Virus record (IMG/VR): IMGVR_UViG_3300031787_007614
Coordinates: 124,001-188,000 of that record
Reading direction: 5' to 3' (one strand)
DNA length: 64,000 bases
The notes under the pieces are model-generated. The model was not told the DNA's origin. It saw only the letters and a program-made list of their open reading frames with translations, and ran no database searches. The stretch's first letter is position 1. Each line of letters starts with the position of its first letter. Of this stretch, positions 6,247-23,394 are shown piece after piece. The position numbers and the translations under genes were made by a program.

Positions 6247-6249
6247 CCC

Positions 6250-6572: not shown

Positions 6573-6623
6573 TCTCCTTAATTAAGCAAGTTGCGATAGG
6601 ACCCGGCCTATCCAGCGTCCTAT
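6573..6623 (-). promoter_or_regulatory. Structured 5' leader: hairpin plus ROSE-like CUUGCUU/AAGGAG SD stem
   Basis: ATAGGAC/GTCCTAT stem (6596-6602 with 6617-6623), then CTTGCTT-AATT-AAGGAG. Confidence 0.6.
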
Positions 6624-6628
6624 GTGCT

Positions 6629-6660
6629 ATTATATATGATAATTATGTTGCATTGCAACA
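6629..6660 (-). promoter_or_regulatory. Promoter TTGCAA-18-TATAAT overlapped by palindrome TGTTGCA-T-TGCAACA (PhaR-like operator)
   Basis: Perfect 7-1-7 inverted repeat at 6646-6660; -10 at 6634-6629. Confidence 0.6.
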
Positions 6661-6732
6661 ATTATTTCTAGTGGATGGTCACTAAAAACCAAATCCAAAA
6701 ACGGCATACTAAATACAACATAGGAGATTGAA

Positions 6733-7002
6733 ATGTTAAAAGCTATTTTTAATTGGTTTACCAGCAAGCCAGTTCCAGGCACAGAAGCACCTGTTGTAAA
6801 AGCTGAATCTGCACCTTACAAAGTTGAACCACCACCAGTTGTTAAAGTGAGTGAACCAGCACCTGTTGGTGACCATGTAAGGGTAGAAGCCACTGCACCA
6901 GTTGAGTCAGCACCAAAAGCCAAACGAGCTCCTGCTGTAAAGAAGGCTGTTGCACCCAAGGCACCTGCTAAACCTAGGGCAAAAAAAGCACCTAAACAAT
7001 AA
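6733..7002 (+). CDS. Pro/Ala/Lys-rich histone-H1-like small protein
   Basis: C-terminus APKAKRAPAVKKAVAPKAPAKPRAKKAPKQ; TAAATA and AGGAG upstream. Confidence 0.7.
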   Translation: MLKAIFNWFTSKPVPGTEAPVVKAESAPYKVEPPPVVKVSEPAPVGDHVRVEATAPVESAPKAKRAPAVKKAVAPKAPAKPRAKKAPKQ

Positions 7003-7023
7003 ACTCGCGTTATATTATCATAG

Positions 7024-7054
7024 AAGCCCCGTGTAAATACTATATGGGGCTTTT
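7024..7054 (+). terminator. Hairpin AAGCCCC/GGGGCTT+TT with TAAATA promoter motif in its loop
   Basis: Arms 7024-7030 and 7046-7052; TAAATA at 7034-7039; csgF ATG at 7057. Confidence 0.65.
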
Positions 7055-7056
7055 CT

Positions 7057-7497
7057 ATGAAAACAACAATAACAACATTAGCCTTGATGCTGGTTACAGC
7101 TGGAGCCACCGCCACTGAACTAGTACATCAATTTAATTCGCCGTCGTTCAGTGGTATCGGTTACAGTAGTCACGTCCTTACAATCGAACAACTAGAGGCA
7201 ACACGCCGTCAGAAACTACGAGAAGAAGAAGCAAGCAGGATAGCCAAAGCCGAGCTTGCTGCCAAACAAACCAATATAGCTAAATTTCTAGTCAACGTAG
7301 AAAGTCGCATCTACGCTCAGTTGAGCAAACAGTTGGCAGACTCGCTGTTCAGCGGTGGGGGCACCACAGGCAGCATGGATTTCCAAGGCACCAACATCAG
7401 TTGGGTCAAAACTTCTACTGATGTAACCATGACCATTCTAGAAAGCAATGGCAATCGCACAGAGATCACTGTGCCACTAGCGAGTTTTGCATTTTGA
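7057..7497 (+). CDS. csgF: Curli assembly protein CsgF-like
   Basis: Signal peptide, then ELVHQFNSPSFSG (CsgF N-terminal F..PSF.G motif). Confidence 0.85.
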   Translation: MKTTITTLALMLVTAGATATELVHQFNSPSFSGIGYSSHVLTIEQLEATRRQKLREEEASRIAKAELAAKQTNIAKFLVNVESRIYAQLSKQLADSLFSGGGTTGSMDFQGTNISWVKTSTDVTMTILESNGNRTEITVPLASFAF

Positions 7498-8321
7498 TGA
7501 AAGCACTGTTTTTATCATTGCTGTTGGCTGTGTCTGGGTGTGCCAGTTTGGATCAAACTCAATTTGATGTACAGCCACCTCAATTGGTGCCACGACAAAA
7601 TTTGTTGGCTGTGTTGCCCGAGTTAGATGGTCCAAGAATACCTGTTGCTGTATATGGATTCATGGACAAGACTGGTCAGAAAAAAAACAACGACAAGCTG
7701 GCGTTATTTTCTACAGCGGTAACACAAGGTGCTGAAGTGTTTTTGATCAAGGCCTTGCAAGACACCCCAAACTGGTTCACAGTGGTTGAACGTGTAGGCC
7801 TGGACAACTTGATCAAAGAGCGTCAACTGATTCGCAATCAACGTGAAGTGTACGAAGGCAAAGATGCCAAGCCGCTCAAGCCTTTGTTGGTAGCTGGACT
7901 CATGATTGAAGGTGGCATCATTGGTTATGACACCAACATAACGTCTGGTGGTCGAGGAGCCAGAGTGCTAGGCATTGGTGCCAGTACTCAATATCGTGTG
8001 GACGAGATTGTGATATCCATGCGAGTGATTTCAGTCAACACTGGAGAAGTGTTGCTGAATACGGCTGTGAGCAAGACGGTGTTTAGCACAGCTCACAATC
8101 AAGGTGTTCTCAAATTTGTTGACCTTGGCACAACCAGTGTTGAACTTGAGAACGGGGCTGCTATTAACGAGCCCACCACATACGCTGTTCGAATAGCCAT
8201 CGAGCAAGCGGTGTACGAAATGATCCAAGAAGGAGCAAAACGGAAACTTTGGTCATACAAAAAGGGCACAAGCCCAAGGAGTGCGGATGAGGATAGTAAC
8301 TTGCCCACAAAACAAAAATGA
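7494..8321 (+). CDS. csgG: Curli secretion pore lipoprotein CsgG
   Basis: Lipobox VSGC; AVYGFMDKTGQ, FSTAVTQGA, WFTVVERVGLDNLIKERQLIR, EGGIIGYD. Confidence 0.95.
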   Translation: MMKALFLSLLLAVSGCASLDQTQFDVQPPQLVPRQNLLAVLPELDGPRIPVAVYGFMDKTGQKKNNDKLALFSTAVTQGAEVFLIKALQDTPNWFTVVERVGLDNLIKERQLIRNQREVYEGKDAKPLKPLLVAGLMIEGGIIGYDTNITSGGRGARVLGIGASTQYRVDEIVISMRVISVNTGEVLLNTAVSKTVFSTAHNQGVLKFVDLGTTSVELENGAAINEPTTYAVRIAIEQAVYEMIQEGAKRKLWSYKKGTSPRSADEDSNLPTKQK

Positions 8322-8944
8322 AAATAACAAGATCTCTCAAAGGGACAATATTTGCATTGAGCATGATGGCTTTATCGCATGTTCAAGCTTCAAATGAAAT
8401 TTACATAGAGCAAGTTGGTGATAATGCCACAGTGACTTTAAAACAAGCAGGCAGCAACAATACCATTGGCTCTGCCCTAGCACCGGCCTTTATTGGTGGC
8501 GGCCAAAACGTAGTTTACGTTGAACAATCTGGCAGTAGCAATCAACTGGCCATGTTGGTCAACGGCGCTGGCACTAATGTGACGTTAACAATCACAGGCG
8601 ACAGCAACCAACAGACCATCACATGCGGAACCAGCATCAGCGCCAGCTGTAGCGGATCTGCAATCACGCATACCATAACAGGTGACAACAATGATGTGCA
8701 AAGTATCCTAGGTACCAATGGTGGAGCGCATACCAGTAACATCACAGTGCTAGGTGACTACAACCATGTGACTCATAGCAGTTCAGGATCAGGCGCCAAC
8801 TCAGCCACAATCAATGTTACTGGGTCAGGCTCAGGTGCTACCCCAAATGCAATCACTGTATCACAGAGTGGTATGAATACTCAAAGTGCAACCGTCAATG
8901 CTTCGGGCAATAACATTAATATCAGTATTATTCAGTCTGACTAA
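8318..8944 (+). CDS. Curlin-repeat (CsgA/CsgB-like) secreted protein
   Basis: Signal peptide; repeated I/V-x-Q-x-G-x-x-N units (EQVGDN, KQAGSNN, EQSGSSN, ITGDSN, ITGDNN, SQSGMN). Confidence 0.75.
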   Translation: MKITRSLKGTIFALSMMALSHVQASNEIYIEQVGDNATVTLKQAGSNNTIGSALAPAFIGGGQNVVYVEQSGSSNQLAMLVNGAGTNVTLTITGDSNQQTITCGTSISASCSGSAITHTITGDNNDVQSILGTNGGAHTSNITVLGDYNHVTHSSSGSGANSATINVTGSGSGATPNAITVSQSGMNTQSATVNASGNNINISIIQSD

Positions 8945-9974
8945 TACTTGGGCTGGAGTAGGCAAGGTCACTGAACAAACTGGCCCTACTGAAATAGTAC
9001 GGGCTCGAAAAAGCATATCCAGTGCTGTAAATACCGCAGTGGAAATGAATGACACCATTGTCACAGCCCGATCCCGAGCTGAACTTACATTTGATGATGC
9101 TACCAAAGTCAAAATTACTGAACAGTCAAAGCTGATAATTGATGACTTTGTGTATGACCCAAAGTCAGGCACAGGCAAGTTGGCCATGAAAGTGGCTCTG
9201 GGCACGGCTAGATATGCATCAGGACAGATTGCCAAGAACTCTCCACAACAGGTTGCAGTCAGCACACCCACAGCTTCTATTGCTGTGCGTGGCACAGACT
9301 TTTCAATGACCGTGGACGAGCTTGGGCGCAGTCTAATAATGCTGTTGCCCAGTTGTGATGACAAAACATGTGTAACAGGTGCTATTGAAGTATCCAATCA
9401 ATCTGGTAGCATACTAATGACACAGGCCTATCAAGCTACTTTAGTTTCCACAGTAGATACACCGCCAACCAGACCAGTTGTGTTGACCATTGATCAGGCC
9501 AACATCAACAACATGCTGATCATCAGCCGGCCCCGAGAAATTAGCGAAGAACATAGAGACAACAAAAAAGATGTTCGAACAGCGTTAGACGTTAACTTTC
9601 TTGATCGAGACTTTTTAAAACCTGCAGATTTAGACAATCGGTTGGATGCATTCAACCGACTGGATCGCAATGAACTAGAAGATGAGCTGTTGCCCAATGT
9701 GTTGGATGCCGTAAATGCAGCCTTGTCGGCCACGCAAGAAGCCATGTCAACTACACTGAGCATGCTGCCAGGCTATGACGCTGGCTCAGGATTAAAATGG
9801 CGGGTAGATGATCAAGAACAGCTGGGTTTAACCAGATACAGCACTCATATTTTTGAACTAACTGTTCCCAAAGAGCAAGGGGCAATACTGGATCTCCAAC
9901 AGGACGGCATTCCTGTATATCAAAAAATCAACACAGGTGGAACCACCACAATTACCATTGTCCAAAGTCAATAA
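8898..9974 (+). CDS. FecR-domain periplasmic protein
   Basis: Signal peptide; DTIVT, AELTFDDATKVKITEQS, STPTASIAVRGTDF FecR motifs. Confidence 0.88.
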   Translation: MLRAITLISVLFSLTNTWAGVGKVTEQTGPTEIVRARKSISSAVNTAVEMNDTIVTARSRAELTFDDATKVKITEQSKLIIDDFVYDPKSGTGKLAMKVALGTARYASGQIAKNSPQQVAVSTPTASIAVRGTDFSMTVDELGRSLIMLLPSCDDKTCVTGAIEVSNQSGSILMTQAYQATLVSTVDTPPTRPVVLTIDQANINNMLIISRPREISEEHRDNKKDVRTALDVNFLDRDFLKPADLDNRLDAFNRLDRNELEDELLPNVLDAVNAALSATQEAMSTTLSMLPGYDAGSGLKWRVDDQEQLGLTRYSTHIFELTVPKEQGAILDLQQDGIPVYQKINTGGTTTITIVQSQ

Positions 9975-10001
9975 ATACTACTATAAAAATAAGGAGCCAA
10001 C

Positions 10002-10283
10002 ATGGGGGACATCTTCAAGTTAATTGGTGATCTAGGATTTCCAATAGCAGTGGCATTAGCAGGTGGATACTTTGTTTATCTCACAATCAAACTGTTGTTA
10101 GCCGGTGTACTAAGTGCAATCAAAGGCATGGCTGGCATCATCACAGCACTCGACAATCGCGTAAAGACCATGAATCATGATGTGGTTCGCATTGATACCA
10201 TTGTGTCAAATGCGCTGGGCCTCAAACCCGATGTGGATCGTATTGCACGAGCAGATGGTAAGAATGATGCAAGGAGAGATTGA
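10002..10283 (+). CDS. Small membrane/coiled-coil protein (YvrJ/holin-like), paralog of 10465..10806
   Basis: LIGDLGFPIAVA N-terminus; TAAATA at 9972-9977 and AAGGAG SD. Confidence 0.65.
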   Translation: MGDIFKLIGDLGFPIAVALAGGYFVYLTIKLLLAGVLSAIKGMAGIITALDNRVKTMNHDVVRIDTIVSNALGLKPDVDRIARADGKNDARRD

Positions 10284-10468
10284 TGTTACATCTTGATTAC
10301 AACTGGGACCTGGGCCCTGGATATATTGTGCCAGACAAAGAATTAGACACTGAAAGACTGGGCTGGAAGCCTGGACAGTTCTGGCAGATGATTGAAGTCA
10401 ATGGAAAAATAAGATTACACCAGGTGGATCCCATGGTCCAATTTGTATTGGAAGGATCTGTCAAATGA
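10280..10468 (+). CDS. Hypothetical protein
   Basis: Coupled overlaps with both neighbours. Confidence 0.65.
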   Translation: MMLHLDYNWDLGPGYIVPDKELDTERLGWKPGQFWQMIEVNGKIRLHQVDPMVQFVLEGSVK

Positions 10469-10806
10469 GCGAAGTAGTTGAACTAGTAAACAAATATGGC
10501 TTTCCTATTGTGATGGCTGTGGGCATGGGCTACATCATCAAGTATGTTTGGGAATGGGCCACAAAAGAAGTCAAACCTGTTATCAATGATGCCAACACTG
10601 TGTTGATTGCTCTCATTGACCGCGTTAGAATGTTGGACAATGATCTTATTCGTTTGAATCAAAAGGTCAACACAGTGTTGCACCTACGTGGCAAGATGAT
10701 TGAAAGTGATCGTGTGATGGAAGCACACAAAGTAGATCATGAAGCTGAAAAAACGTTCAAGAGTGTAGTGCAAGATAAAACTACTACCAAGCCAGGCGGA
10801 AGTTAA
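10465..10806 (+). CDS. Small membrane/coiled-coil protein, paralog of 10002..10283
   Basis: LVNKYGFPIVMA; ALIDRVRMLDNDLIR vs ALDNRVKTMNHDVVR. Confidence 0.65.
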   Translation: MSEVVELVNKYGFPIVMAVGMGYIIKYVWEWATKEVKPVINDANTVLIALIDRVRMLDNDLIRLNQKVNTVLHLRGKMIESDRVMEAHKVDHEAEKTFKSVVQDKTTTKPGGS

Positions 10807-10814
10807 GTACTTTA

Positions 10815-11519
10815 ATGACAGAACTAATAGCAACCCTGGTAATGACACACATTACCATAGTTTGCGTCACTTTGTATTTGCATCGTGGACAAGCTCATCG
10901 AAGTATAGAATTTCATCCCATACTCGAACACTTTATGCGAGCCTGGTTATGGCTCACAACAGGCATGGTTACCAAGCAATGGGTGGCTATACATCGCAAG
11001 CATCATAGGCACAGTGATCAACCAGGTGATCCACACAGCCCACATGTGTATGGCATCAAGAGAGTTTTCTTTAAAGGAGCAGGATTATATCATGAAGCAT
11101 CAAAAGATAAAATCATGGTTGACGCATACGGTGTTGGTACTCCTGCTGATTGGGTGGAGCTTCACTTATACACTCCTCACAGTAGACTTGGCATTGGCAT
11201 TCTCTTTGTGCTCAACACCTTGATATTTGGTTGGTGGGGCATCTTAATCTGGGGCATACAAATGATCTGGATTCCATTCTGGGCTGCAGGGGTAATCAAC
11301 GGTCTAGGTCACTGGTGGGGATATAGAAATGGTGAAACTAAAGATCACAGCAGAAACATTGTTCCTTGGGATATTATTGTTGGTGGGGAATGCCTGCATA
11401 ATAACCATCATCTGGATCCTGCTAACGCTCGACTGAGTCGTCGTTGGTTTGAGTTTGATGCAGGATGGATGTGGCTCACAGTGTTTAGAGCACTGTATCT
11501 TGCCAAATTAAGAACTTAA
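10815..11519 (+). CDS. Membrane fatty-acid desaturase (delta-9/DesC-like)
   Basis: His boxes HRGQAH, HRKHH, HNNHH. Confidence 0.92.
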   Translation: MTELIATLVMTHITIVCVTLYLHRGQAHRSIEFHPILEHFMRAWLWLTTGMVTKQWVAIHRKHHRHSDQPGDPHSPHVYGIKRVFFKGAGLYHEASKDKIMVDAYGVGTPADWVELHLYTPHSRLGIGILFVLNTLIFGWWGILIWGIQMIWIPFWAAGVINGLGHWWGYRNGETKDHSRNIVPWDIIVGGECLHNNHHLDPANARLSRRWFEFDAGWMWLTVFRALYLAKLRT

Positions 11520-11520
11520 A

Positions 11521-13569
11521 TTACTTTTCATGGGCAACAAACTCACCGTTCCAGTTGTCGCCTAGGTCCTGTTGCTTCATGAACGCACAACGTTCAATCC
11601 ACATTTTATAGTACTTGTCCATTTGCCCACCAAACTTGCCGTGCAATTCTTCACACAAGATAACAGCCGCATCAAACTGTTTTTCTTTGTATAAGGCATG
11701 CATTTTGTTGTGCGTAGCACGTTCTTTAGTATAATCCTCACCACGAGTGCGTAGCACGGTGTAGATCAAGTCTGCTACTGTTTTGCCTTTGGGTTGTAAG
11801 TTATCTAATAGCAAGTAGAAGAAGTCATCTCGAGTTCTGTTGTATGTCTCAGCACCAACAATGGCCAACACACCATAAGCCTTACAACGTGCTTCTAGTC
11901 GTGCGGCTGTTGACACCATGTCACCCAAGATGTCATAACTGTGTCGTTCTGTTGAACCCATCTCACCAATAAAGCCGACGCCTGTGTTACAGCCCCAACC
12001 CATTGCAGCTGGTGGTAAGCCCTGAGCTTCCATCTCTTTAGTGTAAGCATCTACAGCATCCAACATTTCTAATCCTACTTGAACAATAGTTCTAGCATGG
12101 TTAGGATCTTCAATTGGAGCACCGTGTATGTGCATACTCGCATCACCCACATACTTTATGACCATGCCTTTGTTGTCTAGTATAGGGCGGCTGATGCTGT
12201 CCATGTAGCCGTTCATGTACCGGCCAAGTCCAGCAACATCATCGCCGTAGTGTTCCCCAATTGGTGTAAAACCACGTAAGTCACTGAACATGACACTTAC
12301 GTCTTTACGCACGCCACGCTTGATCAAGTCTGGATCTTTTTGCAGTAGCTCTACAACTTCCTTGGAACAGTAGCCTGCAAATTGTTTTTTGATTGCTTGT
12401 TTTTGGAGGAACTCTGAGACAAACTTGACTCCGTAGGCGTGTAGCCCGACAAGGACAATGCCCGCGACTGGGAGGGTAACGTCAAATAACCAAAGGTAAT
12501 TGACAAAACTAAAGTAACTGCCATACGCAAGTACAGCGCATATTCCAACCAACGAGATAAGACCAACATACACCCACCTTGTAAGAATTAATAATAACAC
12601 GCCTGCTGCCAAGATAACAAGTATTTCAACTCCATCAGCGTAGTCTGGACGCACAATATTGGTGCCTGCTGCCACAGTTTCTAGTACACTGGCTTGCAAG
12701 TAGTGCGGATAGACTTCTCCTCTTGCAGTTGCGACGGGGTTGTTGAGCCCGCGAGCTGTGAGTCCGACAATGACAATTCCACCTTGGAAGTCCTCTGGCA
12801 AATCAGCCAGGGAGTATTCTTGCGGTTGGGATGACCAATCCACCCAAACTCTACCGTAACTGTCTGTTGGAATTTTTCCAAACTGTGGAATTCTAACTGC
12901 TTCAACGCTTCCGTCATTGACTCGGACCTGGAAGCTGGGATCTCCGGCAAGGACTCTAAGCGTTTCAAGACTGATGGAGGGATAGACTTGTTCTCCAACT
13001 GTGACGACTTGGGGGACTCGGCGTACAACGCCGTCGATTTCAGGCAAAGTGTTAACAATGCCAATGCCGCTTGCTGTTTCATTTAATGACCTCACGTTGG
13101 GTTGAATACTTTGATACGCTATGCCCGGCAAACCAGTGCCTATTACAGACACACCAGGTCTGTAAGGTGCGTACTTGGACACAGTGTTTTCGTTGGTGGC
13201 CATGTGTGGCAACACTACTAAACTCTCTTTGAGTTGCCGAGACAGTGCAGAGTCTTGCCCAAAACGATCCACATCGGGCATGAATATGTTAAACACAATC
13301 ACACCTGCATTGCGATCTTCTAACTGACGAATAATGTCAGCATACTGATTTCTGGGAAAAGGAAACTGCCCACGTTGAGCAATAGCACGGTCGTCAATGT
13401 TGACCACATGAATTTGCTCACTTGTTGTAACAGCACGATCAGTGATCAGCATGTCAAAGTAACGTAGTCTTATACTTTCTACAAAGCTAGGATCAGCAAT
13501 TCTTATACTTAAAATAAGTGCCAATGTAATTAGAGCAGTCCATGGACTTAGTAGAATTTTTTTCAACAT
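11521..13569 (-). CDS. CHASE2-domain class III adenylate/guanylate cyclase
   Basis: N-terminal TM, CHASE2 (VVNID, QFPFPR, DGVVRRVP), three TMs, cyclase FSDLRGFT / KYVGDA / GDMVSTAARLE. Confidence 0.93.
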   Translation of the reverse strand: MLKKILLSPWTALITLALILSIRIADPSFVESIRLRYFDMLITDRAVTTSEQIHVVNIDDRAIAQRGQFPFPRNQYADIIRQLEDRNAGVIVFNIFMPDVDRFGQDSALSRQLKESLVVLPHMATNENTVSKYAPYRPGVSVIGTGLPGIAYQSIQPNVRSLNETASGIGIVNTLPEIDGVVRRVPQVVTVGEQVYPSISLETLRVLAGDPSFQVRVNDGSVEAVRIPQFGKIPTDSYGRVWVDWSSQPQEYSLADLPEDFQGGIVIVGLTARGLNNPVATARGEVYPHYLQASVLETVAAGTNIVRPDYADGVEILVILAAGVLLLILTRWVYVGLISLVGICAVLAYGSYFSFVNYLWLFDVTLPVAGIVLVGLHAYGVKFVSEFLQKQAIKKQFAGYCSKEVVELLQKDPDLIKRGVRKDVSVMFSDLRGFTPIGEHYGDDVAGLGRYMNGYMDSISRPILDNKGMVIKYVGDASMHIHGAPIEDPNHARTIVQVGLEMLDAVDAYTKEMEAQGLPPAAMGWGCNTGVGFIGEMGSTERHSYDILGDMVSTAARLEARCKAYGVLAIVGAETYNRTRDDFFYLLLDNLQPKGKTVADLIYTVLRTRGEDYTKERATHNKMHALYKEKQFDAAVILCEELHGKFGGQMDKYYKMWIERCAFMKQQDLGDNWNGEFVAHEK

Positions 13570-13572
13570 CAA

Positions 13573-13707
13573 TTATTTATTGGGGGGGTTTGGAGCAGAT
13601 TCTTTGGCTTTTTGTTTAGCTTTTTCTGAAGCCGGGCTTGATCTGTGCGGAGTAGTGGGGCGGGGGGTCGAAGGATATCGGGGCGGTTTGTGCTTGAACC
13701 AACTCAT
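13573..13707 (-). CDS. 44-aa Pro/Lys-rich peptide (not in ORF track)
   Basis: MSWFKHKPPRYPSTPRPTTPHRSSPASEKAKQKAKESAPNPPNK; TAAATA at 13732-13727 and AAAGGA SD. Confidence 0.6.
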   Translation of the reverse strand: MSWFKHKPPRYPSTPRPTTPHRSSPASEKAKQKAKESAPNPPNK

Positions 13708-13762
13708 AGGCTGTGTCCTTTTGAAGTATTTAATTGAGCTCAAACATGATAAAGTTAATTGT

Positions 13763-13993
13763 TTATTTTTTGTTATAGTTCCAGACCAGTCTGCGCTGTT
13801 CTTTGCGCACCCAATGCATACAATCTTCTTTCAGTGACAGATTTTTGATTTTATCACAGTGATGAATACTTACTGTTGCTTGAGCCATGCACATGGCATT
13901 TTGCTCAGGATCTTTGATCTTGGTGCAATCATTTAGGTTTACGGCCCATGATTGCATGGGCGCAAACACAAGCATAAACATTGTGGGCCACAT
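13763..13993 (-). CDS. Small secreted Cys-rich protein
   Basis: Signal peptide and four Cys; TAAATA 4 nt upstream of ATG. Confidence 0.7.
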   Translation of the reverse strand: MWPTMFMLVFAPMQSWAVNLNDCTKIKDPEQNAMCMAQATVSIHHCDKIKNLSLKEDCMHWVRKEQRRLVWNYNKK

Positions 13994-16466: not shown

Positions 16467-16472
16467 ACATGT

Positions 16473-16501
16473 ATTATACGACTACTTTATTAAAAAGTCA
16501 A
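16473..16501 (-). promoter_or_regulatory. sigma70-type promoter TTGACT-17-TATAAT (leaderless uvsE)
   Basis: The -35 contains the upstream TGA; ATG 6 nt after the -10. Confidence 0.85.
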
Positions 16502-17415: not shown

Positions 17416-18329
17416 AATGTTGTCTCTATTTGTTGCAAAAGTGGTTCAATAATTTGTTGCTTGATACAACTCTGTACATATGCTTGATCAAAAAATCTAT
17501 CATGATTATGCTGTAATTTTTCCAACGTAATACGATCATATGGCACCTGTTTAAAGTTGCCAACATTGCTAACCATTGCTTTTAATCGATCAACCGAGTT
17601 AGATATAGCGTCATATGATTCATCAAATAAATTATTAAAAGTTTCAAATCCCAAATTTTTTAAATGTTGCAATGATCCCAATTCTCCCCAAATCAAGAAT
17701 GGATGATAAAACGCCAGGGCCTTGAATGTTTTTTCACTAATCAATAAAGGTGTATTCACTACTGTCATAACTCTAGTTTCTGCAACTATGCTAAAATATG
17801 TATCATCGTACCATCGTGCTTCAAAATGTCGTTGCCCTGGCCAATCTACTACAGGAACATCGAACGGCAATTGTCGACCCATGCCTACATAACTCCAATA
17901 ACACTTGTCAAGGTATGGGGCCATGCGTTCCAATAATTGTGTTCGGTGGTGTTTATGCAAATTCATAGGCATAAGTGCAAGTTTTTTATAAGTTTTCTGT
18001 GGTTGATAAGTGTGATAGTTGTGAGCAATCATTTGCAGACTGTCGTGATACCACATGTAGTCCTGATGGTGCAACACATATCCGTTGCTTGTGGTGAATT
18101 TAATACCGGGTTCGTGTAACCCATCATATACGATTTGAAATCCACGTTCTAAAAACTCATCATGCACACTGGTTTTTTTCAATGCATCAGTATAGTATAA
18201 TGTGGTTTTGGGATCGTAGTTTTTGTCAACCTGATATTGTTCAACGTTAAAATATTCCTGATATAACGGAAGTTCCAAATTAGAATGTATAGTTCCAAGA
18301 TGATCATATATCAAGGTGAATTTTTTCAT
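17412..18329 (-). CDS. Putative glycosyltransferase-like protein
   Basis: SIVAET...ISEKTFKAL..HPF..LGFETF..FDESYD, shared with 20062..21399. Confidence 0.5.
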   Translation of the reverse strand: MKKFTLIYDHLGTIHSNLELPLYQEYFNVEQYQVDKNYDPKTTLYYTDALKKTSVHDEFLERGFQIVYDGLHEPGIKFTTSNGYVLHHQDYMWYHDSLQMIAHNYHTYQPQKTYKKLALMPMNLHKHHRTQLLERMAPYLDKCYWSYVGMGRQLPFDVPVVDWPGQRHFEARWYDDTYFSIVAETRVMTVVNTPLLISEKTFKALAFYHPFLIWGELGSLQHLKNLGFETFNNLFDESYDAISNSVDRLKAMVSNVGNFKQVPYDRITLEKLQHNHDRFFDQAYVQSCIKQQIIEPLLQQIETTL

Positions 18330-18829
18330 AAGTGTCCTGTAATTTGTAATGTGTATCTTGGTTCAAACCCACAGTTGGCAGCCATGTGTGGCGTGTCGTA
18401 CCGCCACTCCACTGTGTCTCCTGCTCGCCAGTTTGTCATTGGTTGATCTTCATATTCGCCGTAGTGTCCAGGTTTCCAGTCTTCAAGGAATACTACTGCT
18501 CGTCTGATATGTTGTTCCTGGCCTTGCAATTTAAACAATTCAATATATTTGACATAGAGATCTTGATGAGTAGGAAGGATTGTGCCTGAACTCATTCTGT
18601 AATAGCTGGTGCCCACATCCTTCCAGCCCATTTCTTCGTAAATTTTTACAAATTGTTTGTTCCAACTGGGTTGCACTGATCGCATGTCGCACATGTCGCC
18701 AGTGAATTTATTGGCAAAGCCTTGCCCTTGCCAGAGTTCTAGATTTTTTGAATCATTGAATGTTTCATTGATATACAATAGCTGTTTAAACTCGTTATCC
18801 CAAAATTTTGGAATGTGGTATTTAAGCAT
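18326..18829 (-). CDS. 2OG-Fe(II) oxygenase-like protein
   Basis: PTHQD and distal PHMA His. Confidence 0.6.
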   Translation of the reverse strand: MLKYHIPKFWDNEFKQLLYINETFNDSKNLELWQGQGFANKFTGDMCDMRSVQPSWNKQFVKIYEEMGWKDVGTSYYRMSSGTILPTHQDLYVKYIELFKLQGQEQHIRRAVVFLEDWKPGHYGEYEDQPMTNWRAGDTVEWRYDTPHMAANCGFEPRYTLQITGHL

Positions 18830-20063
18830 GTCTAGTGTTACCGTAATGCACCACTTCAACGTTGTCTGTAGATTCCAACTTGCGCCATGGGTCAACAATT
18901 ATACTGCCAGGCAAAATGTCACAGTAGGGTTTGGTGTCAGCTTGATCGCCGGTGTACTCATATGTGATCTTGCGATTGTGTGCCCACAAAAAGATTGCAG
19001 GTGTATCAACACCATCTACCACTTTGTCTTTGTTGTCAGCAAGTGGATCAACATACACAACTGATTTACCTTCCATCTCAACGTAGTGCCCAACCAAGGT
19101 TGAGTATGAACCAATACAGTATTCTACGTCAGGCTTGTAGGCCTTGCCGTGAATCACAATGGGCATGTTGTCATTCATCACACTTAAATCAACCAAGAAC
19201 ATGGCCAAGTTCTTAGCTTGAATTTCTCTAGCATGCATCACAGTATCAAACAAGTCATACCCAATGTTGTATTCTTTGGCCAACCAACGCAGTGCAATGT
19301 TATCACGTGGATGGCAAGCACCGGCATCTCCCATGCCTGCTGTCATGTACTTGGGTCCCATGATACGCATGGTTGAACGTGCAAGAGCATTTGTGACAAC
19401 GTCTACATTGATATTGCCAATTCGCATGGCAAAGTCTTGGACCATGTTTACAAGGCCCACTTTGGCCGAAATAAATGTGTTGTAAAAAATCTTAATGGCT
19501 TCGCATTCGTCCCAGGTACCAATTTCGTAGCGTGGGTCATTTTGCATCACTGTGTCATACAAATCACGAAGTTCACCGGCCAAGGCATTGGGGTTGCCAT
19601 CTTCAGTACCAATCATGATCATTTCAGGGTTCACCATGTCCCACTTTACCGAGCCCATGGCAATCAGGTAAGGATTGTACAAGAACTGATGCTTGGCATC
19701 CAACAACGGAACAAAGTGCTTGCGAGTAGTGCCAGGTAGCACTGTAGAGATCAACACAACCTTCTTGGAGCCAGTCGCGTATTTGTTAACATTTTTAATA
19801 GCATCAATCACAGCCGCATGCCCAAAATCTCGAGGTTCCATGTGTGAGCTTGGCACTGATCCATCATAGCCTTCAGCATGTGGTGTAGGCACAGCAATAA
19901 AAATCCATTCGCTTTCGTTTACTAGTTCTTCAATGTCGCAGACTTTTACTGAGTCACTGACTCTTGGGTAAATATCGTAACCGCGCACTTCGTGCTTTTC
20001 TGCCATGACTTCTGCGCAGTCAAGTCCTAGTTTCCCAATACCAATAAAACCAATTTTCTTCAT
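18822..20063 (-). CDS. ugd: UDP-glucose/GDP-mannose 6-dehydrogenase
   Basis: GFIGIGKLG, IAVPTP, STVLPG, catalytic GACHPRD, GKAYK; AAAGGA SD before MKKIG. Confidence 0.92.
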   Translation of the reverse strand: MKKIGFIGIGKLGLDCAEVMAEKHEVRGYDIYPRVSDSVKVCDIEELVNESEWIFIAVPTPHAEGYDGSVPSSHMEPRDFGHAAVIDAIKNVNKYATGSKKVVLISTVLPGTTRKHFVPLLDAKHQFLYNPYLIAMGSVKWDMVNPEMIMIGTEDGNPNALAGELRDLYDTVMQNDPRYEIGTWDECEAIKIFYNTFISAKVGLVNMVQDFAMRIGNINVDVVTNALARSTMRIMGPKYMTAGMGDAGACHPRDNIALRWLAKEYNIGYDLFDTVMHAREIQAKNLAMFLVDLSVMNDNMPIVIHGKAYKPDVEYCIGSYSTLVGHYVEMEGKSVVYVDPLADNKDKVVDGVDTPAIFLWAHNRKITYEYTGDQADTKPYCDILPGSIIVDPWRKLESTDNVEVVHYGNTRHA

Positions 20064-21399
20064 GAGTGTTCCTTTAGATAGATTATACAATTTTTTGCAA
20101 AGCCTTTGCAACCGAGATATCATAATTTATCGCTGGACGCCACATGGCTCAAGAAATTTAGGCGATCTGACGCCAATAAAAACTATACAATATCAGACAG
20201 ATGTATTATTAACTATCCCCCCAATAATCTGTCATGATCAAGAGCCGTTAAATTACAACTATTGGACTCAACATGATTTTGTACAAAATTCAACATTGAT
20301 TCTTGAAGAGTCAACTATTGTTGCTAACCAGTTTGCCCACTGGCATTTACGTTCAGCTTTACGCCGAAGACACAAAGCACATGTTTTTAAAAATACCTTA
20401 TTATGTCATTCAGAACTTAACAGCAAAGAACTAGACAAATACACACAAAATAACTTCACCGGAGTTTACTACTGGGCACATGGATTGATTGCTAGAGATT
20501 GGTTTAGATTTGCGCAACTAGATCATAGTCTAAAACAAAAAAATATTCAGTCTGATTTTTTGATTTACAACAGAGCATGGTGCGGCACTAGAGAGTATCG
20601 GTTAAAGTTTGCAGAACTTTTGGTAAAAAACAATTTACATCATCACTGTCAGATGGGATTCAATGACACTGATAGCATTCACTACAGTAACCACAAGTTT
20701 AACAATCCTGCCATGCAAATTTCTAGCACAGATCTTGACCAAAACTTCAAAAAAAATAATTCATTGCCAACAGCCAGTGCAGATTATTGCACTCAGGATT
20801 ATCAGCAAACAGCAATTGAAGTTGTGTTAGAAACGCTGTTTGACGACAGTAGATTGCATCTCACTGAGAAGGCTCTACGTCCAATTGCTTGTGGGCAACC
20901 TTTTATATTGGCAGCAACTGCCGGTAGCCTTGGATATCTTAGAAGCTACGGGTTCAAAACATTTGACTCAGTGTTTGACGAATCGTATGATACCATCAGC
21001 GATCCAGTAGAGCGGCTTCATGCTATAGTCGATCTTATGAACAATATCAAAAACAATCCAAGACGTTTGGAAATATATCAACAGTTACAAGATATCGCCG
21101 ACTTCAATCAACAACGATTCTTTAGTGATGAGTTTCATCAACAAATCGTAGACGAATTTAAACAAAATTTTTCTAATGCGTATGTAGAAGTGTTAAACAG
21201 TTGTACTGGAGAATACATGGAACAATACTTAAATGCCGTACAACAAACTCAAGAATATTATACTGCACCAGTATCAAACAATCATCTTCAAAATCTTAGA
21301 AACTGGACAAAATACGTCTATGATTTTATAGATCGGACAACGAGCGAGTCAAACATCCGTTCCAATCTTCCGGCGGCGGAGTGTGTTCATAATCAGTGA
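20062..21399 (+). CDS. Putative glycosyltransferase-like protein
   Basis: VVLET..HLTEKALRPIACGQPF..GFKTF..FDESYD; start uncertain. Confidence 0.5.
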   Translation: MSVPLDRLYNFLQSLCNRDIIIYRWTPHGSRNLGDLTPIKTIQYQTDVLLTIPPIICHDQEPLNYNYWTQHDFVQNSTLILEESTIVANQFAHWHLRSALRRRHKAHVFKNTLLCHSELNSKELDKYTQNNFTGVYYWAHGLIARDWFRFAQLDHSLKQKNIQSDFLIYNRAWCGTREYRLKFAELLVKNNLHHHCQMGFNDTDSIHYSNHKFNNPAMQISSTDLDQNFKKNNSLPTASADYCTQDYQQTAIEVVLETLFDDSRLHLTEKALRPIACGQPFILAATAGSLGYLRSYGFKTFDSVFDESYDTISDPVERLHAIVDLMNNIKNNPRRLEIYQQLQDIADFNQQRFFSDEFHQQIVDEFKQNFSNAYVEVLNSCTGEYMEQYLNAVQQTQEYYTAPVSNNHLQNLRNWTKYVYDFIDRTTSESNIRSNLPAAECVHNQ

Positions 21400-21685
21400 C
21401 TCTGGCCTGCAGATTGTCGTAGAAACTGTCTAATTCTCCATTCCATCGACCGCGCAGGCCTTTGATTGCACTGTTACAATATTCCCAATTGCGGCCTCGA
21501 TAGGCCTGCATCAAGTCACTGTGTACTTTTTTGTAGGCGTCTAGGGTTGGAAAATCTCCCAAGGGAATATTTTCTACCACACACCAAGCAGTTTCTTGCT
21601 TGTTGCCATCTTCAAATGTATCTAGTTCTAGTATGGTAAACTTTTCGGGAATTAGATGAAGTGAGTCTCCAAATATAATGTGCAT
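21326..21685 (-). CDS. Stand-alone homolog of the cyclase C-terminal region
   Basis: HSDLMQAYRGRNW..LRGRWNGELDSFY..R..WNG aligns with HNKMHALYKEKQF..LHGKFGGQMDKYY..R..WNG of 11521..13569. Confidence 0.75.
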   Translation of the reverse strand: MHIIFGDSLHLIPEKFTILELDTFEDGNKQETAWCVVENIPLGDFPTLDAYKKVHSDLMQAYRGRNWEYCNSAIKGLRGRWNGELDSFYDNLQARVTDYEHTPPPEDWNGCLTRSLSDL

Positions 21686-21709
21686 GTTAAATCCTTTTAA
21701 ATATGTATC

Positions 21710-22498
21710 ATGAAAGTTGCTTTTGACCTAATTTCTGATCTCCACATTGACACCTGGAACGAACCCTTTGACTGGACTGATCGAGCCACCAGTCCATACG
21801 CTATTGTTGCCGGTGACATTGCTGAAGATAGAAAATTGTTATCTGACGCATTGACCAATCTAAGTCGCTGTTATCAAGCTGTGTTTTTTATAGACGGCAA
21901 TGACGAGCATGCTAGATATTATCACAGTCTTAGCGACAGCTACAAAGACCTAACCAAACGCATTGCCAAAATATCTAATGTGGTTTATCTCCAGGACAAT
22001 GTGGTGGTAGTTGATGGTATTGGCATATTGGGCACCAATGGATGGTGGGGATTTGATTTTGAACTCAGCATTGATCCTACTCAAAGTTCTTTGTGGTGGC
22101 AAGAAAAAGAAAATCTCACCAGTGACATTGCTAAAAAGATATCCAGGATGGCTACCAATGATGCGGCGTACATGATAAACTCTGTGAAACGCTTGCAATC
22201 ACACAAGGATGTCAAACACATACTCATGGTCACACATACTGTGCCCTGTCAGCAGTTGATTGAGCATGACATAGATCTTGAAGGCAGCATGCGATTCAAC
22301 ATGATGGGCAACAGAGACATGATGCAGGCTATGGCAGCAGACGACGGGAAAAAGATTCATACCTGGTGTTTTGGACACTATCATGGATCAGTAGACCAAA
22401 TACGCCACGACGTGAGGTTTGTAAACAACTGTCGTGGGCGCAGTGGTTCGCCATGGTCACATCATGTGTACCATCCTCGCAGAATTGAAATTCAGTGA
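21710..22498 (+). CDS. Calcineurin-like metallophosphoesterase
   Basis: ISDLH, AGDI, GNDEH, HTVP, GHYH; TAAATA 6 nt before ATG. Confidence 0.9.
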   Translation: MKVAFDLISDLHIDTWNEPFDWTDRATSPYAIVAGDIAEDRKLLSDALTNLSRCYQAVFFIDGNDEHARYYHSLSDSYKDLTKRIAKISNVVYLQDNVVVVDGIGILGTNGWWGFDFELSIDPTQSSLWWQEKENLTSDIAKKISRMATNDAAYMINSVKRLQSHKDVKHILMVTHTVPCQQLIEHDIDLEGSMRFNMMGNRDMMQAMAADDGKKIHTWCFGHYHGSVDQIRHDVRFVNNCRGRSGSPWSHHVYHPRRIEIQ

Positions 22499-22803
22499 AC
22501 TTCTTCTGGTTCTAATTTGATTTGTAACGGATAACTTTGTGAACGAGCTTGCAAGGTAACTTCGATGCCTTTTTGTTCGGCAATCTCATAAGGTAGCACA
22601 GCAACCACAGCACTTCCAGCTTCGTGAATGTCAACTGTGATTTGTTCAGCAGATTCTGCGGTGTAATCAAAATACTCAACCAAACTACTGACCACAAATT
22701 CCATAGAGGTCTGATTGTCATTGATATAAATCACGCGAAACAACGACGGTGGTCGCACTGCTTCTTGTGTGCGAGTTCGTGATTTCGTTTCAGTTTGAGC
22801 CAT
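22492..22803 (-). CDS. clpS: ATP-dependent Clp protease adaptor
   Basis: RVIYINDNQTSMEFVV, VDIHEAGSAVV, YPLQIKLE. Confidence 0.93.
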   Translation of the reverse strand: MAQTETKSRTRTQEAVRPPSLFRVIYINDNQTSMEFVVSSLVEYFDYTAESAEQITVDIHEAGSAVVAVLPYEIAEQKGIEVTLQARSQSYPLQIKLEPEEVH

Positions 22804-22819
22804 TTTTTATCCTTGTTAG

Positions 22820-22850
22820 CAGTGGCAGCACTGTGCTGCCACTGTATTTA
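22820..22850 (-). promoter_or_regulatory. TAAATA immediately followed by an 11-bp perfect hairpin
   Basis: TAAATA at 22850-22845; CAGTGGCAGCA/TGCTGCCACTG at 22820-22844. Confidence 0.65.
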
Positions 22851-22860
22851 CACAATTATA

Positions 22861-23319
22861 TTAGTTTGTGTAGGTGATCGCAATAGTCTTTGGCTTGGCA
22901 TCTTCGGGCACTTCACGTTTCAAGTGAACGCTTAGAATACCAAGTTCAAGGTGTGCATTACTGATCTCCACATGATCAGCCAACTGAAATTCCCTACGGA
23001 AACTTCTTTCGCTGATGCCTTTGTGCAAATATTTTGTTGTAGTATCCTCATTCTCCACAGTCTCACGACTGTGCTTACCTTCAACAATCAAGAATTTTTT
23101 GTCCTTGGTTACTGTGAGGTTATCATGCCCAAAGCCAGCCACGGCCATGCTGATCATGTACTCATCTTCATTGATTTGTACAATGTCATAGGGTGGGTAG
23201 TTGGTAGAGGATTGTTGAGCACTCACACGCATGAGTTCATCAAACATGCTATCGAAACCGATACCAAATTTGGTGAGTGTGGGAATGTCGAAACTACGAA
23301 GGGTGAGAGTTTTTGTCAT
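22861..23319 (-). CDS. Small heat-shock protein (Hsp20/IbpA-like)
   Basis: NYPPYDI, AVAGF, YLHKGISERSFRREF, A.L..GILSV. Confidence 0.95.
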   Translation of the reverse strand: MTKTLTLRSFDIPTLTKFGIGFDSMFDELMRVSAQQSSTNYPPYDIVQINEDEYMISMAVAGFGHDNLTVTKDKKFLIVEGKHSRETVENEDTTTKYLHKGISERSFRREFQLADHVEISNAHLELGILSVHLKREVPEDAKPKTIAITYTN

Positions 23320-23326
23320 TTGTTTT

Positions 23327-23394
23327 CTCCTTTATATAAGCAAGATGACTTGTAATGTAGCCCCACTATGGGCACTACAACATTATTTATTATA
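23327..23394 (-). promoter_or_regulatory. hsp20 leader: promoter motifs, hairpin and ROSE-like thermometer
   Basis: Overlapping TATAAT/TAAATA at 23394-23384; TGTAG/CTACA hairpin; CTTGCTT-ATATA-AAGGAG. Confidence 0.65.

What the first reader, a model, noticed from the sequence alone, without database searches (positions are those of the whole stretch)
6573..23394. Matching ROSE-like RNA thermometers on hsp20 and the phasin gene
Seen: both leaders have an upstream hairpin with an ATAG-containing loop, then CTTGCTT-(ATATA or AATT)-AAGGAG (6573-6590; 23327-23344), pairing the SD with a bulged G. Established: U(U/C)GCU paired to the SD is the ROSE hallmark of proteobacterial small HSP genes. Inference: heat-gated translation of Hsp20, and unexpectedly of a phasin, which suggests a chaperone role.
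Basis: partly seen in the sequence, partly recalled or inferred. Interest (0 to 1): 0.62.

Follow-up and report, generated by a model that had tools for sequence, protein, structure and literature searches.

The report
Paired ROSE-like leaders in jumbo phage
A 364-kb freshwater jumbo phage carries two copies, and only two, of a short ROSE-type "RNA thermometer" leader: one before its small heat-shock gene, as in bacteria, and one before a small phage protein of unknown function that is not shown to be a phasin.

Summary
Both motifs are on the minus strand, in the 5' leaders of a 90-aa ORF (6567-6295) and of an Hsp20 gene (23319-22861). The window belongs to a 364,404-bp phage record with terminal repeats. 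CTTGCTT-N-AAGGAG occurs only at these two sites in the whole genome.

Each leader has a TATAAT -10 box, a G+C-rich 5' hairpin with a bulged G, and a second hairpin. In that hairpin C-U-U-G-C-U-U pairs with the Shine-Dalgarno sequence around a bulged G.

- About 100 distinct related leaders keep this architecture. Hairpin I covaries strongly. In the SD hairpin, C-G changes to U-A where GGAG becomes GGAA.
- A covariance model built only from the 90-aa gene's leaders finds the Hsp20 leader and nothing else, here and in five related genomes.
- The same model finds hsp20 leaders in SAR11 genomes and in cultured phages.
- Rfam ROSE_3 is the closest family, at 24-36 bits against a cut-off of 43.

Verdict: these are new members of the ROSE-like kind. 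Temperature gating is inferred, not shown, and repression by the IbpA-like Hsp20 itself is a live rival. "Phasin" is unsupported.

The parts
6629..6658 (-). Sigma-70-type promoter of the 90-aa gene: TTGCAA, 18 nt, TATAAT. The -10 box is 6634-6629. The -35 lies inside a palindrome (6646-6660) that is unique in the genome.
   Evidence: The -10 box keeps a fixed distance to hairpin I in 59 related leaders.
6596..6623 (-). Leader A, hairpin I: 11 pairs, bulged G at 6616, loop AUAGG. It starts within 0-3 nt of the predicted transcription start.
   Evidence: Folds. In relatives 6 of 9 inner pairs show changes on both sides and 93.9% of cells pair. RNAalifold finds it unaided.
6574..6590 (-). Leader A, hairpin II (the sensor): anti-SD CUUGCUU (6590-6584, bulged G 6587), loop AAUU, SD AAGGAG (6579-6574).
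   Evidence: 92% of cells pair. C-G changes to U-A in 7 sequences. The wobble is U.G in 28 and C.G in 27. Model energy is -0.84 kcal/mol at 20 C and +0.39 at 30 C.
6295..6567 (-). ORF of 90 aa (P0001), a three-helix protein of unknown function.
6247..6277 (-). Intrinsic terminator (8-bp stem and a T run) that closes the monocistronic unit of the 90-aa gene.
23389..23394 (-). -10 box TATAAT of the Hsp20 leader. The -35 is weak here, but relatives have TTGACA at 17 nt.
   Evidence: A metatranscriptome contig ends at 23385 (weak evidence).
23356..23379 (-). Leader B, hairpin I: UGUAG/CUACA outer stem, U.G wobble, bulged G at 23373, CCC/GGG inner stem, loop AUAGU.
   Evidence: C-G changes to G-C in 12 sequences. 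In the broad set 10 of 11 pairs covary.
23315..23349 (-). Leader B, hairpin II with a closing helix. GUCAU (23349-23345) pairs with AUGAC (23319-23315), which includes the start codon. Inside it, anti-SD CUUGCUU (23344-23338, bulged G 23341), loop AUAUA and SD AAGGAG (23332-23327).
   Evidence: The sequence is almost invariant in 47 relatives. The variant AGUCA/UGACU shifts the closing helix by one pair.
22861..23319 (-). Hsp20 gene (152 aa, P0002). It is IbpA-like and keeps the Arg that corresponds to IbpA R93.

Best explanation
Both elements are short, two-hairpin ROSE-like translational control leaders, of the type described for Pseudomonas ibpA. A host-type promoter starts each transcript at the foot of a stable G+C-rich hairpin I, which probably protects the mRNA and helps it fold. 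A marginally stable hairpin II follows, in which C-U-U-G-C-U-U pairs with AAGGAG around a bulged G and a U.G wobble. In the Hsp20 mRNA a further 5-bp helix also covers the AUG. When hairpin II is closed the 30S subunit cannot bind, and when it opens translation starts. The most likely opening signal is warming. The nearest-neighbour energy of hairpin II crosses zero near 27 C for both leaders, which would count as heat for a lake organism. The phage therefore puts two genes, its sHSP and a 90-aa helical protein, under one post-transcriptional switch.

Shown here: the sequence features, their uniqueness in the genome, their conservation and covariation, and their kinship with bacterial and phage hsp20 leaders.

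Inferred: the transcription starts, SD masking in vivo, and the response to temperature.
For: - The motif occurs twice in 364 kb, against 0.02 expected per window.
- In 59 distinct leaders of the 90-aa gene, 88.6% of cells pair against 82.7% in shuffles, with 85 cells changed on both sides (0 of 500 shuffles reach this). The closing C-G of the SD hairpin becomes U-A in the 7 sequences whose SD is GGAA.
- The wobble next to the bulged G is U.G in 28 sequences and C.G in 27. U goes with an extra U-A pair: counts are 26 (U,A), 18 (C,U), 9 (C,A) and 2 (U,U). This looks like tuning of stability.
- The bulged G is at least 90% conserved in one set and invariant in the other.
- In 47 Hsp20 leaders 98.5% of cells pair, and hairpin I covaries.
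- Rfam's best family is ROSE_3, matched over its full length: 24.1 bits in the window, and 25-36.5 bits in 8 of 20 related loci drawn from both sets.
- Model R1, built only from the 90-aa gene's leaders, scores the Hsp20 leader at 31.1 bits (E 2e-4) while the next hit scores 15.7 bits. Five related genomes of 320-353 kb each show the same pair.
- R1 also hits chromosomal hsp20 leaders in Pelagibacterales at 26-42 bits, downstream of sigma-32-like promoters. It hits the hsp20 leaders of phages Melnitz-3 (43.4 bits), S-CREM1, HTVC115P and Phosso.
- In the broad set of 52 leaders, 95.4% of cells pair against 74.3% in shuffles.
- Hairpin II energy is -2.6 kcal/mol at 5 C, -0.85 at 20 C and +1.2 at 37 C for both leaders.
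- The defining features and the mechanism come from PMC3669281 and PMC11342760.
Against: - There is no measurement of temperature dependence.
- Scores stay below the ROSE_3 cut-off of 43 bits. The window's Hsp20 leader gets no ROSE_3 hit at all; its only weak hit is freshwater-2.
- Nearest-neighbour folding of leader A prefers a different register that leaves the SD in a loop.
- Predicted SD occlusion ranks 46th of 66 for the 90-aa gene and 9th of 66 for Hsp20 among the phage's own SD-bearing starts, and it hardly changes between 15 and 37 C.
- Hairpin II and the AUG helix of the Hsp20 leaders never vary, so they give no covariation evidence.
- The outer helix of leader A pairs in only 77% of cells, shows one compensatory change, and is degenerate in the window itself.
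- One relative (L065) has no leader at all. I left it out of alignments A1 and A4.
- The promoters are sigma-70-like, not heat-shock promoters.
- A lake phage sees little temperature change within one infection.
Confidence: 0.6

Rival explanations
1. The leader is mainly an operator for the phage Hsp20 itself. As shown for E. coli IbpA, sHSP oligomers would bind the structured ROSE-type 5'UTR and repress translation. Unfolded or aggregating protein, for example during mass production of virion proteins, would titrate the sHSP away and release both mRNAs. The shared leader would then define a two-gene regulon that senses aggregation rather than temperature. This can coexist with thermosensing.
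For: - The phage Hsp20 aligns with Salmonella IbpA and keeps the Arg equivalent to IbpA R93 (R105), where IbpB has Gln. It also keeps the aromatic residue equivalent to Y34 (Y41) and an Arg equivalent to R97.
- These Arg positions are conserved across the phage homologues aligned: R105 is invariant and R109 is at least 90% conserved in A5.
- PMC10474464 shows that R93 is essential for binding the ibpA 5'UTR and is common in alpha- and gamma-proteobacterial IbpAs.
- Exactly two mRNAs per genome carry the leader.
- The gene sits among ClpX and ClpS, a protein quality-control setting.
Against: - The K98 equivalent is Glu.
- Binding of an sHSP to short two-hairpin ROSE elements has not been shown; the published cases use the longer enterobacterial and Vibrio leaders.
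- Nothing here tests binding.
Confidence: 0.25
2. The leader is a fixed expression cassette: a 5' hairpin that stabilises the mRNA plus a strong, A-rich ribosome binding site. It has no switching function. It is conserved because it was inherited with hsp20 and copied once.
For: - Hairpin I at the 5' end is the best supported part. 5' hairpins are known mRNA stabilisers, as discussed in PMC3669281.
- Thermodynamic models do not predict strong SD masking for leader A.
- L065 manages without the leader.
Against: - The anti-SD heptamer and the bulged G are conserved as strongly as the SD.
- The C-G to U-A change tracks the change from GGAG to GGAA.
- The wobble and the extra pair trade off against each other.
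- The same anti-SD sits before hsp20 genes in distant bacteria and phages.

None of these is needed for a plain cassette.
Confidence: 0.1
3. The two sites resemble each other by chance.
For: The elements are short and A+T-rich.
Against: Expected count is 0.02 against 2 observed. R1 gives E 2e-4 in the window genome, and five relatives show the same pair.
Confidence: 0.02

Closest known systems
ROSE_3 (Rfam RF02523): short ROSE-like RNA thermometers of Pseudomonas ibpA (Krajewski et al. 2013, PMC3669281)
   Same: - Leader length is about 60-70 nt, with two hairpins.
- Hairpin I is G+C-rich and insensitive to temperature, and shares the core GAUGCC...GGGUC, which some relatives match exactly.
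- Hairpin II pairs U(U/C)GCU with the SD around a bulged G.
- It stands before an IbpA-type sHSP gene.
- It is the best and only consistent Rfam match.
   Different: - Scores are 24-36 bits against a cut-off of 43.
- The promoter is sigma-70-like rather than sigma-32.
- Hairpin II has no flanking G-C clamps.
- The Hsp20 leader also pairs its AUG, which is unpaired in Pseudomonas.
- The element is phage-borne, and a second copy regulates a gene that is not an HSP.
Uncharacterised hsp20 leaders of Pelagibacterales (SAR11) and other Alphaproteobacteria, found here
   Same: They have the same two-hairpin plan and an ACUUGCUUA...AAGGAG hairpin II. R1 scores them at 26-42 bits.
   Different: They are chromosomal, lie behind sigma-32-like promoters (CTTGAAA ... 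CCCATAT), and have A+T-richer stems. Rfam ROSE_3 does not detect most of them. I found no report of them in the paper library.
hsp20 leaders of cultured phages (Methylophilales phage Melnitz-3, Synechococcus phage S-CREM1, Pelagibacter phage HTVC115P, Sinorhizobium phage Phosso)
   Same: R1 matches directly upstream of their hsp20 genes with the same architecture: 43.4, 22.3, 17.6 and 15.7 bits.
   Different: These are unrelated phage lineages. None has a homologue of the 90-aa protein, so there is no second copy of the leader.
ROSE-like thermometers on non-HSP genes (ABC transporter genes, PMC11342760)
   Same: They show that the U(U/C)GCU and bulged-G module can gate genes other than chaperone genes.
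   Different: They are bacterial, differ in architecture, and control other classes of gene.
IbpA self-repression through the ibpA 5'UTR (PMC10474464, PMC10410725)
   Same: An IbpA-type sHSP with the critical Arg, together with a ROSE-type leader.
   Different: It is shown only for gamma-proteobacterial IbpAs with longer leaders, and it was not tested here.
Known RNA thermosensors of phages and prophages (SPbeta blyA fourU, PMC10586365; lambda cIII, from my own knowledge)
   Same: They are temperature-responsive mRNA structures in phage genes.
   Different: They use other motifs (fourU, or alternative structures) and are not ROSE-like.

Membership tests
ROSE-like RNA thermometers | Conserved U(U/C)GCU anti-SD motif in the 5'UTR | tested here: met
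   CUUGCUU is present in both leaders. In relatives the second position is U in 28 sequences and C in 27, as in the family definition (definition).
ROSE-like RNA thermometers | The motif pairs imperfectly with the SD in a stem that has a bulged G | tested here: met
   This is met in silico only. The register gives 6 pairs around G6587 or G23341. Cells pair in 92% (set A), 98.9% (set B) and 98.1% (broad set). A compensatory C-G to U-A change occurs in 7 sequences. The G is at least 90% conserved or invariant. No structure probing was possible.
ROSE-like RNA thermometers | Translation rises with temperature through melting of the SD hairpin | not testable with these tools
   Only model energies are available: they cross zero near 27 C. 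The ensemble prediction shows little change between 15 and 37 C.
ROSE_3 (RF02523) | Two-hairpin leader with a stable, conserved hairpin I | tested here: met
   Hairpin I is predicted unaided. It covaries at 6 of 9 pairs and at 10 of 11 pairs in the broad set.
ROSE_3 (RF02523) | Score at or above Rfam's gathering cut-off (43 bits) | tested here: not met
   Nothing passes in the window at the gathering threshold. Leader A scores 24.1 bits, leader B gets no hit, and relatives score 25-36.5 bits.
ROSE_3 (RF02523) | Precedes an sHSP (ibpA) gene transcribed from a sigma-32 promoter | tested here: inconclusive
   The sHSP gene is there for leader B but not for leader A. Both promoters look sigma-70-like (TATAAT) with no CCCCAT box. 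The SAR11 counterparts do have sigma-32-like boxes.
Phasin (Pfam PF09361 Phasin_2) | Match to the family profile at its curated threshold | tested here: not met
   P0001 has no hit even at E up to 1. Eight of 40 homologues hit with best E 0.0023, and equally weak hits go to unrelated helical families. The ESM Atlas gives only a lead, score 0.87. No phasin appears by PDB profile or fold search.
Phasin | Association with polyhydroxyalkanoate granules or PHA genes | not tested
   The neighbours annotated include no PHA genes, and the host is unknown.
IbpA-type self-regulating sHSP | Arg at the position of IbpA R93, plus an aromatic residue at Y34 and cationic residues at R97/K98 | tested here: met
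   R105, Y41 and R109 align with these positions. The K98 equivalent is Glu, and R108 lies next to it. IbpB has Gln at the R93 position (criteria). RNA binding itself was not tested.

The most novel reading that the evidence does not exclude
The shared leader is the recognition element of a phage-encoded post-transcriptional regulon. The IbpA-like Hsp20 would bind both leaders and hold both mRNAs silent until temperature or, more relevantly for a phage, a surge of unfolded virion protein releases them. The 90-aa helical protein would be a new partner or client-handling factor of the phage's own proteostasis set (ClpX, ClpS, Hsp20). That would make it the first phage regulon built on a ROSE-type RNA, and a functional handle on a protein family with more than 2,000 members and no annotation.
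Probability: 0.15. Interest if true: 0.75.

Novelty: new member of a known kind. Interest (0 to 1): 0.5.

Why it matters
ROSE-type thermometers are known from proteobacterial chromosomes. I found no report of them in phages in the paper library.

- They accompany hsp20 in a large clade of freshwater jumbo phages and in several cultured phages. So phages seem to capture the regulatory RNA together with the chaperone gene, while replacing the heat-shock promoter.
- The second copy, on a conserved and otherwise anonymous 90-aa protein, is the only functional clue for that family. It says the protein is wanted under the same conditions as an sHSP.
- The ~100 natural variants form a ready-made mutational series for studying how hairpin stability is tuned. 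Examples are the trade-off between the U.G or C.G wobble and the extra U-A pair, and GGAG changing to GGAA together with C to U.
- The SAR11 hsp20 leaders found on the way are not covered by Rfam.

Tried and rejected
- Rfam at gathering thresholds over the window found nothing.
- The freshwater-2 hit on the Hsp20 leader (23 bits against a cut-off of 49.9) rests mostly on the A-rich RBS string and lacks the middle of the model, so I rejected it as a family assignment.
- megablast of 20 kb against cultured phages found no match. tblastn of the 90-aa protein against phages found no match either.
- Function of the 90-aa protein: Pfam, PHROGs, ESM Atlas, an AlphaFold2 model (three helices, pLDDT 83), Foldseek against the PDB, and a PDB profile search gave nothing usable. 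The word-based search returned 2,241 relatives of about 90 aa, all without a Pfam domain. That tool sees only lengths of 0.55-1.75 times the query, so longer fusions are not excluded. I did not use the large representative search.
- Complex prediction with Hsp20 and the 90-aa protein gave no verdict (score 0.00). This is no evidence either way.
- RNA evidence: four lake or freshwater metatranscriptome runs hold contigs on the Hsp20 gene. One contig, with 1 mismatch, ends at 23385, 3 nt from the predicted start. Contigs cannot prove a 5' end, DNA carry-over is possible, and a relative's contig runs on upstream. I do not count this as a mapped start.
- A third copy: pattern search and R1 over the whole genome found none. 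The ROSE-like core at window 51570-51596 lies inside an operon, has no hairpin I, and gets no R1 hit, so I treat it as chance.
- Host: the genome search draws no relatives for a virus record. Contigs with 80% identical Hsp20 sit in Haliscomenobacter and Sediminibacterium MAG bins. SD use (28% of long ORFs against a 6% background) and TATAAT promoters fit Bacteroidota poorly, so these are probably phage contigs in bins. The host remains unknown.
- The moraphage paper (PMC12619734) describes a different clade, smaller and predicted to infect Bacteroidota.


Full report
**What the window is.** The window is bases 124,001-188,000 of a 364,404-bp IMG/VR virus record with direct terminal repeats, so it belongs to a jumbo phage. 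PHROG and Pfam hits fit a phage: ribonucleotide reductase, ATP-dependent DNA ligase and tail-spike-like proteins. No cultured phage is close at the DNA level.

**The observation.** Both motifs lie on the minus strand. Read in sense, CTTGCTT-AATT-AAGGAG occupies 6590-6574 and ends 6 nt before the ATG of a 90-aa ORF (6567-6295). CTTGCTT-ATATA-AAGGAG occupies 23344-23327 and ends 7 nt before the ATG of a 152-aa ORF (23319-22861).
- The pattern is expected 0.02 times in the window and occurs twice.
- It occurs nowhere else in the 364-kb genome.
- Each motif is preceded by a hairpin with AUAG in its loop (6623-6596 and 23379-23356) and, a few bases further up, by a TATAAT box (6634-6629 and 23394-23389).

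**The genes.** The 152-aa protein is an Hsp20 (PF00011, E 1.5e-16; phrog_432, E 1.7e-39). It is about 39-40% identical to enterobacterial IbpA.

The 90-aa protein has no Pfam or PHROG hit.
- It belongs to a family of at least 2,241 proteins of about 90 aa, none with a Pfam domain. The contigs listed reach about 350 kb, the size of this phage.
- The family has an invariant C-terminal KFDYxKFGEGIMKAY block.
- The AlphaFold2 model has three helices and a mean pLDDT of 83.
- Phasin_2 appears only as sub-threshold hits in 8 of 40 homologues (best E 0.0023). Equally weak hits go to Bac_DNA_binding (18 of 40), perilipin and others.
- The Atlas feature search gives PHA-related clusters only at lead level.
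- Foldseek and a PDB profile search find no phasin.

I therefore call it a protein of unknown function, not a phasin. Its gene is a self-contained unit of promoter (TTGCAA, 18 nt, TATAAT), leader, ORF and a strong intrinsic terminator at 6277-6257.

**Comparative evidence within the phage clade.** Scans of IMG/VR returned 80 loci for each protein. Many lie on contigs of 300-350 kb, and several contigs carry both genes. After removing duplicates, 59 leaders of the 90-aa gene and 47 Hsp20 leaders were aligned with MAFFT, without reference to any structure. L065 has no leader and was left out.

Both sets keep the -10 box at a fixed distance from hairpin I. This places the transcription start at the foot of that hairpin.

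For the structure I wrote down, the 90-aa set gives these counts:
- 88.6% of cells pair, against 82.7% in shuffles and 37-55% when the partners are slid.
- 85 cells have changes on both sides (0 of 500 shuffles reach this).
- Hairpin I has 6 of 9 inner pairs with compensatory changes.
- The SD hairpin pairs in 92% of cells. Its closing C-G becomes U-A in the seven sequences whose SD reads GGAA instead of GGAG.
- The pair next to the bulged G is U.G in 28 sequences and C.G in 27, which is the U/C alternation that defines ROSE.

The weaker U.G form nearly always comes with an extra U-A pair, and the C.G form often lacks it. The counts are 26, 18, 9 and 2. This is what selection for a set, marginal stability would produce, although the sequences are not independent.

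The Hsp20 set pairs in 98.5% of cells. Its hairpin I covaries, with C-G changing to G-C in 12 sequences. Its SD hairpin and the GUCAU/AUGAC helix over the start codon never vary, so they neither support nor contradict the pairing. A few relatives carry AGUCA/UGACU instead, which moves that helix by one pair through a synonymous codon change.

The corresponding outer helix in the 90-aa set (GUAAA/UUUAC) is weak. It pairs in 77% of cells, shows one compensatory change, and is degenerate in the window.

**Are the two leaders the same kind of element?** I built a covariance model (R1) from the 90-aa gene's leaders alone.
- Over the whole genome R1 scores its own leader at 85.4 bits and the Hsp20 leader at 31.1 bits (E 2e-4). 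Everything else scores 15.7 bits or less.
- In five related, 92-100% complete genomes of 320-353 kb, R1 finds the same pair each time: one leader before the 90-aa gene and one before Hsp20. Only one further hit, marginal at 21.6 bits, appears.

Two copies per genome on these two genes is therefore a conserved trait of the clade.

**Relation to known families.**
- In sensitive mode, Rfam's best match to leader A is ROSE_3. It aligns over the full length and through both hairpins, at 24.1 bits against a cut-off of 43.
- Eight of 20 related loci, drawn from both gene sets, hit ROSE_3 at 25-36.5 bits, and no other family recurs.
- Hairpin I shares its core (GAUGCC...GGGUC, with a bulged G) with the Pseudomonas element.
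- The published definition is a U(U/C)GCU motif imperfectly paired to the SD with a bulged G, in a two-hairpin leader whose hairpin I is stable and whose hairpin II melts (PMC3669281, PMC11342760). Every sequence-level point of that definition is met.
- The Rfam threshold and the sigma-32 promoter are not met.

**The same leader elsewhere.** A scan of one genome per prokaryotic species with the Hsp20 alignment returned 61 loci.
- R1 hits the 5'UTR of hsp20 in about 34 of them at E below 0.02. Most are Pelagibacterales, including isolate genomes, at 26-42 bits.
- In those genomes the leader lies behind sigma-32-like boxes. Rfam ROSE_3 does not detect most of them.
- R1 also hits directly upstream of hsp20 in cultured phages: Melnitz-3 (43.4 bits), S-CREM1 (22.3), HTVC115P (17.6) and Phosso (15.7). 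It hits the last hairpin of Salmonella ibpA weakly.
- In an alignment of 52 such leaders, 95.4% of cells pair against 74.3% in shuffles, and 10 of 11 hairpin I pairs covary. That alignment was fitted to the model, so it leans towards the structure.

The Hsp20 leader is therefore an ordinary member of a broad group of short ROSE-like hsp20 leaders that is only partly catalogued. The unusual item is its twin on the 90-aa gene.

**Mechanism.** In the ROSE register, hairpin II of both window leaders has almost the same model energy: about -2.6 kcal/mol at 5 C, -0.85 at 20 C, +0.35 at 30 C and +1.2 at 37 C. The midpoint is thus near 27 C, which is plausible for organisms from lake water. The runs that hold this sequence are lake and freshwater metatranscriptomes. 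With its closing helix, the Hsp20 element is more stable: -5.2 at 20 C and -1.6 at 37 C.

Against this:
- Unconstrained folding of leader A prefers another register, which uses a non-conserved codon and leaves the SD in a loop.
- Predicted SD occlusion is unremarkable for leader A (46th of 66) and only moderately high for the Hsp20 leader (9th of 66).

Solved ROSE stems contain non-canonical interactions that such models ignore. The models therefore neither prove nor disprove masking.

**A rival worth testing.** E. coli IbpA represses its own translation by binding its ROSE-type 5'UTR, and Arg93 is indispensable for this (PMC10474464). The phage Hsp20 keeps that Arg (R105, where IbpB has Gln), the Y34-equivalent Tyr and an R97-equivalent Arg, but it has Glu at K98. 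The gene sits in a row ClpX - ribosomal protein bS21 - orf75 - Hsp20 - ClpS. The leader may therefore respond to free Hsp20, that is, to protein aggregation during infection, as well as or instead of temperature. A structure prediction for Hsp20 with the 90-aa protein gave no verdict.

**Verdict.** The ROSE-like interpretation is supported by sequence, structure conservation and family relations. Heat gating remains an inference, and the phasin label is not supported. Neither paper search that paired RNA thermometers with phages returned a ROSE-type element in a phage. ROSE-like control of non-HSP genes is already known in bacteria. I rate this a new member of a known kind, of moderate interest.

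No alternative genetic code was used. Read laying was given 901 letters.

Noticed in passing
window 22492-25056 (-): The genes around Hsp20 form a proteostasis and translation row. It runs ClpX-like AAA+ with a ClpX zinc finger (25056-23851), ribosomal protein bS21 (23858-23634), a 75-aa ORF (23634-23407), Hsp20, then ClpS (22803-22492), which has its own promoter-like site at 22883-22855.
   Followed up: partly
window 7057-11519 (+): Divergent from the 90-aa gene, the phage encodes CsgF-like (7057-7497) and CsgG-like (7494-8321) curli-type secretion channel parts. A FecR-domain protein (8886-9974) and a fatty-acid desaturase (10815-11519) follow. This is unusual cargo for a phage.
   Followed up: no
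window 6646-6660: A perfect palindrome, TGTTGCA-T-TGCAACA, overlaps the -35 of the 90-aa gene's promoter. It is the only intergenic copy in the genome, and related phages keep it as a palindrome despite base changes. It is a candidate operator for a dimeric regulator, which would mean a second, transcriptional layer of control.
   Followed up: partly
L209, L227-L229, L233, L235, L242 and others (about 100 nt upstream of hsp20): Chromosomal hsp20 genes of Pelagibacterales (SAR11), isolates included, carry a two-hairpin ROSE-like leader behind sigma-32-like promoter boxes. Rfam ROSE_3 does not detect them, and I found no paper that describes them.
   Followed up: partly
L254:337-408, L255:339-410, L252:323-400, L251:339-410: The hsp20 genes of unrelated cultured phages (Melnitz-3, S-CREM1, HTVC115P, Phosso) are also preceded by leaders that match R1. 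Phage hsp20 genes seem generally to travel with this RNA.
   Followed up: partly
L065:1429-1518; L082:1426-1518: These are natural variants. One relative of the 90-aa gene has lost the whole leader, so its promoter sits about 20 nt from the ATG. One phage with an identical Hsp20 protein has the SD changed from GGAG to GAAG, which breaks the C-G pair.
   Followed up: no
window 23317-23375 (-): There is a weak match to Rfam freshwater-2 (RF02980, 23 bits against 49.9). Its 3' end is letter for letter the A-rich RBS string AAAGGAGAAAACAAAUG of the Hsp20 leader. That metagenomic motif may come from related freshwater phages.
   Followed up: no
L189, L190, L191: Contigs with Hsp20 that is 80% identical (and one that is 51% identical, with a typical GUCAU/AUGAC leader) are filed in MAG bins named Haliscomenobacter and Sediminibacterium. 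They are probably phage contigs in bacterial bins and are weak as host evidence.
   Followed up: partly
L188 (G004:C1:271215-271273, +): In one related genome R1 gives a marginal hit (21.6 bits, E 0.04) on the opposite strand next to the 90-aa gene's leader, towards the divergent gene. The window shows nothing comparable.
   Followed up: no
window 22700-23600: Lake and freshwater metatranscriptome assemblies contain contigs identical or nearly identical to the Hsp20 gene and its leader: X1 with 169 nt and no mismatch, X2 with 182 nt and 1 mismatch. This suggests the gene is transcribed in nature, but DNA carry-over cannot be excluded.
   Followed up: partly
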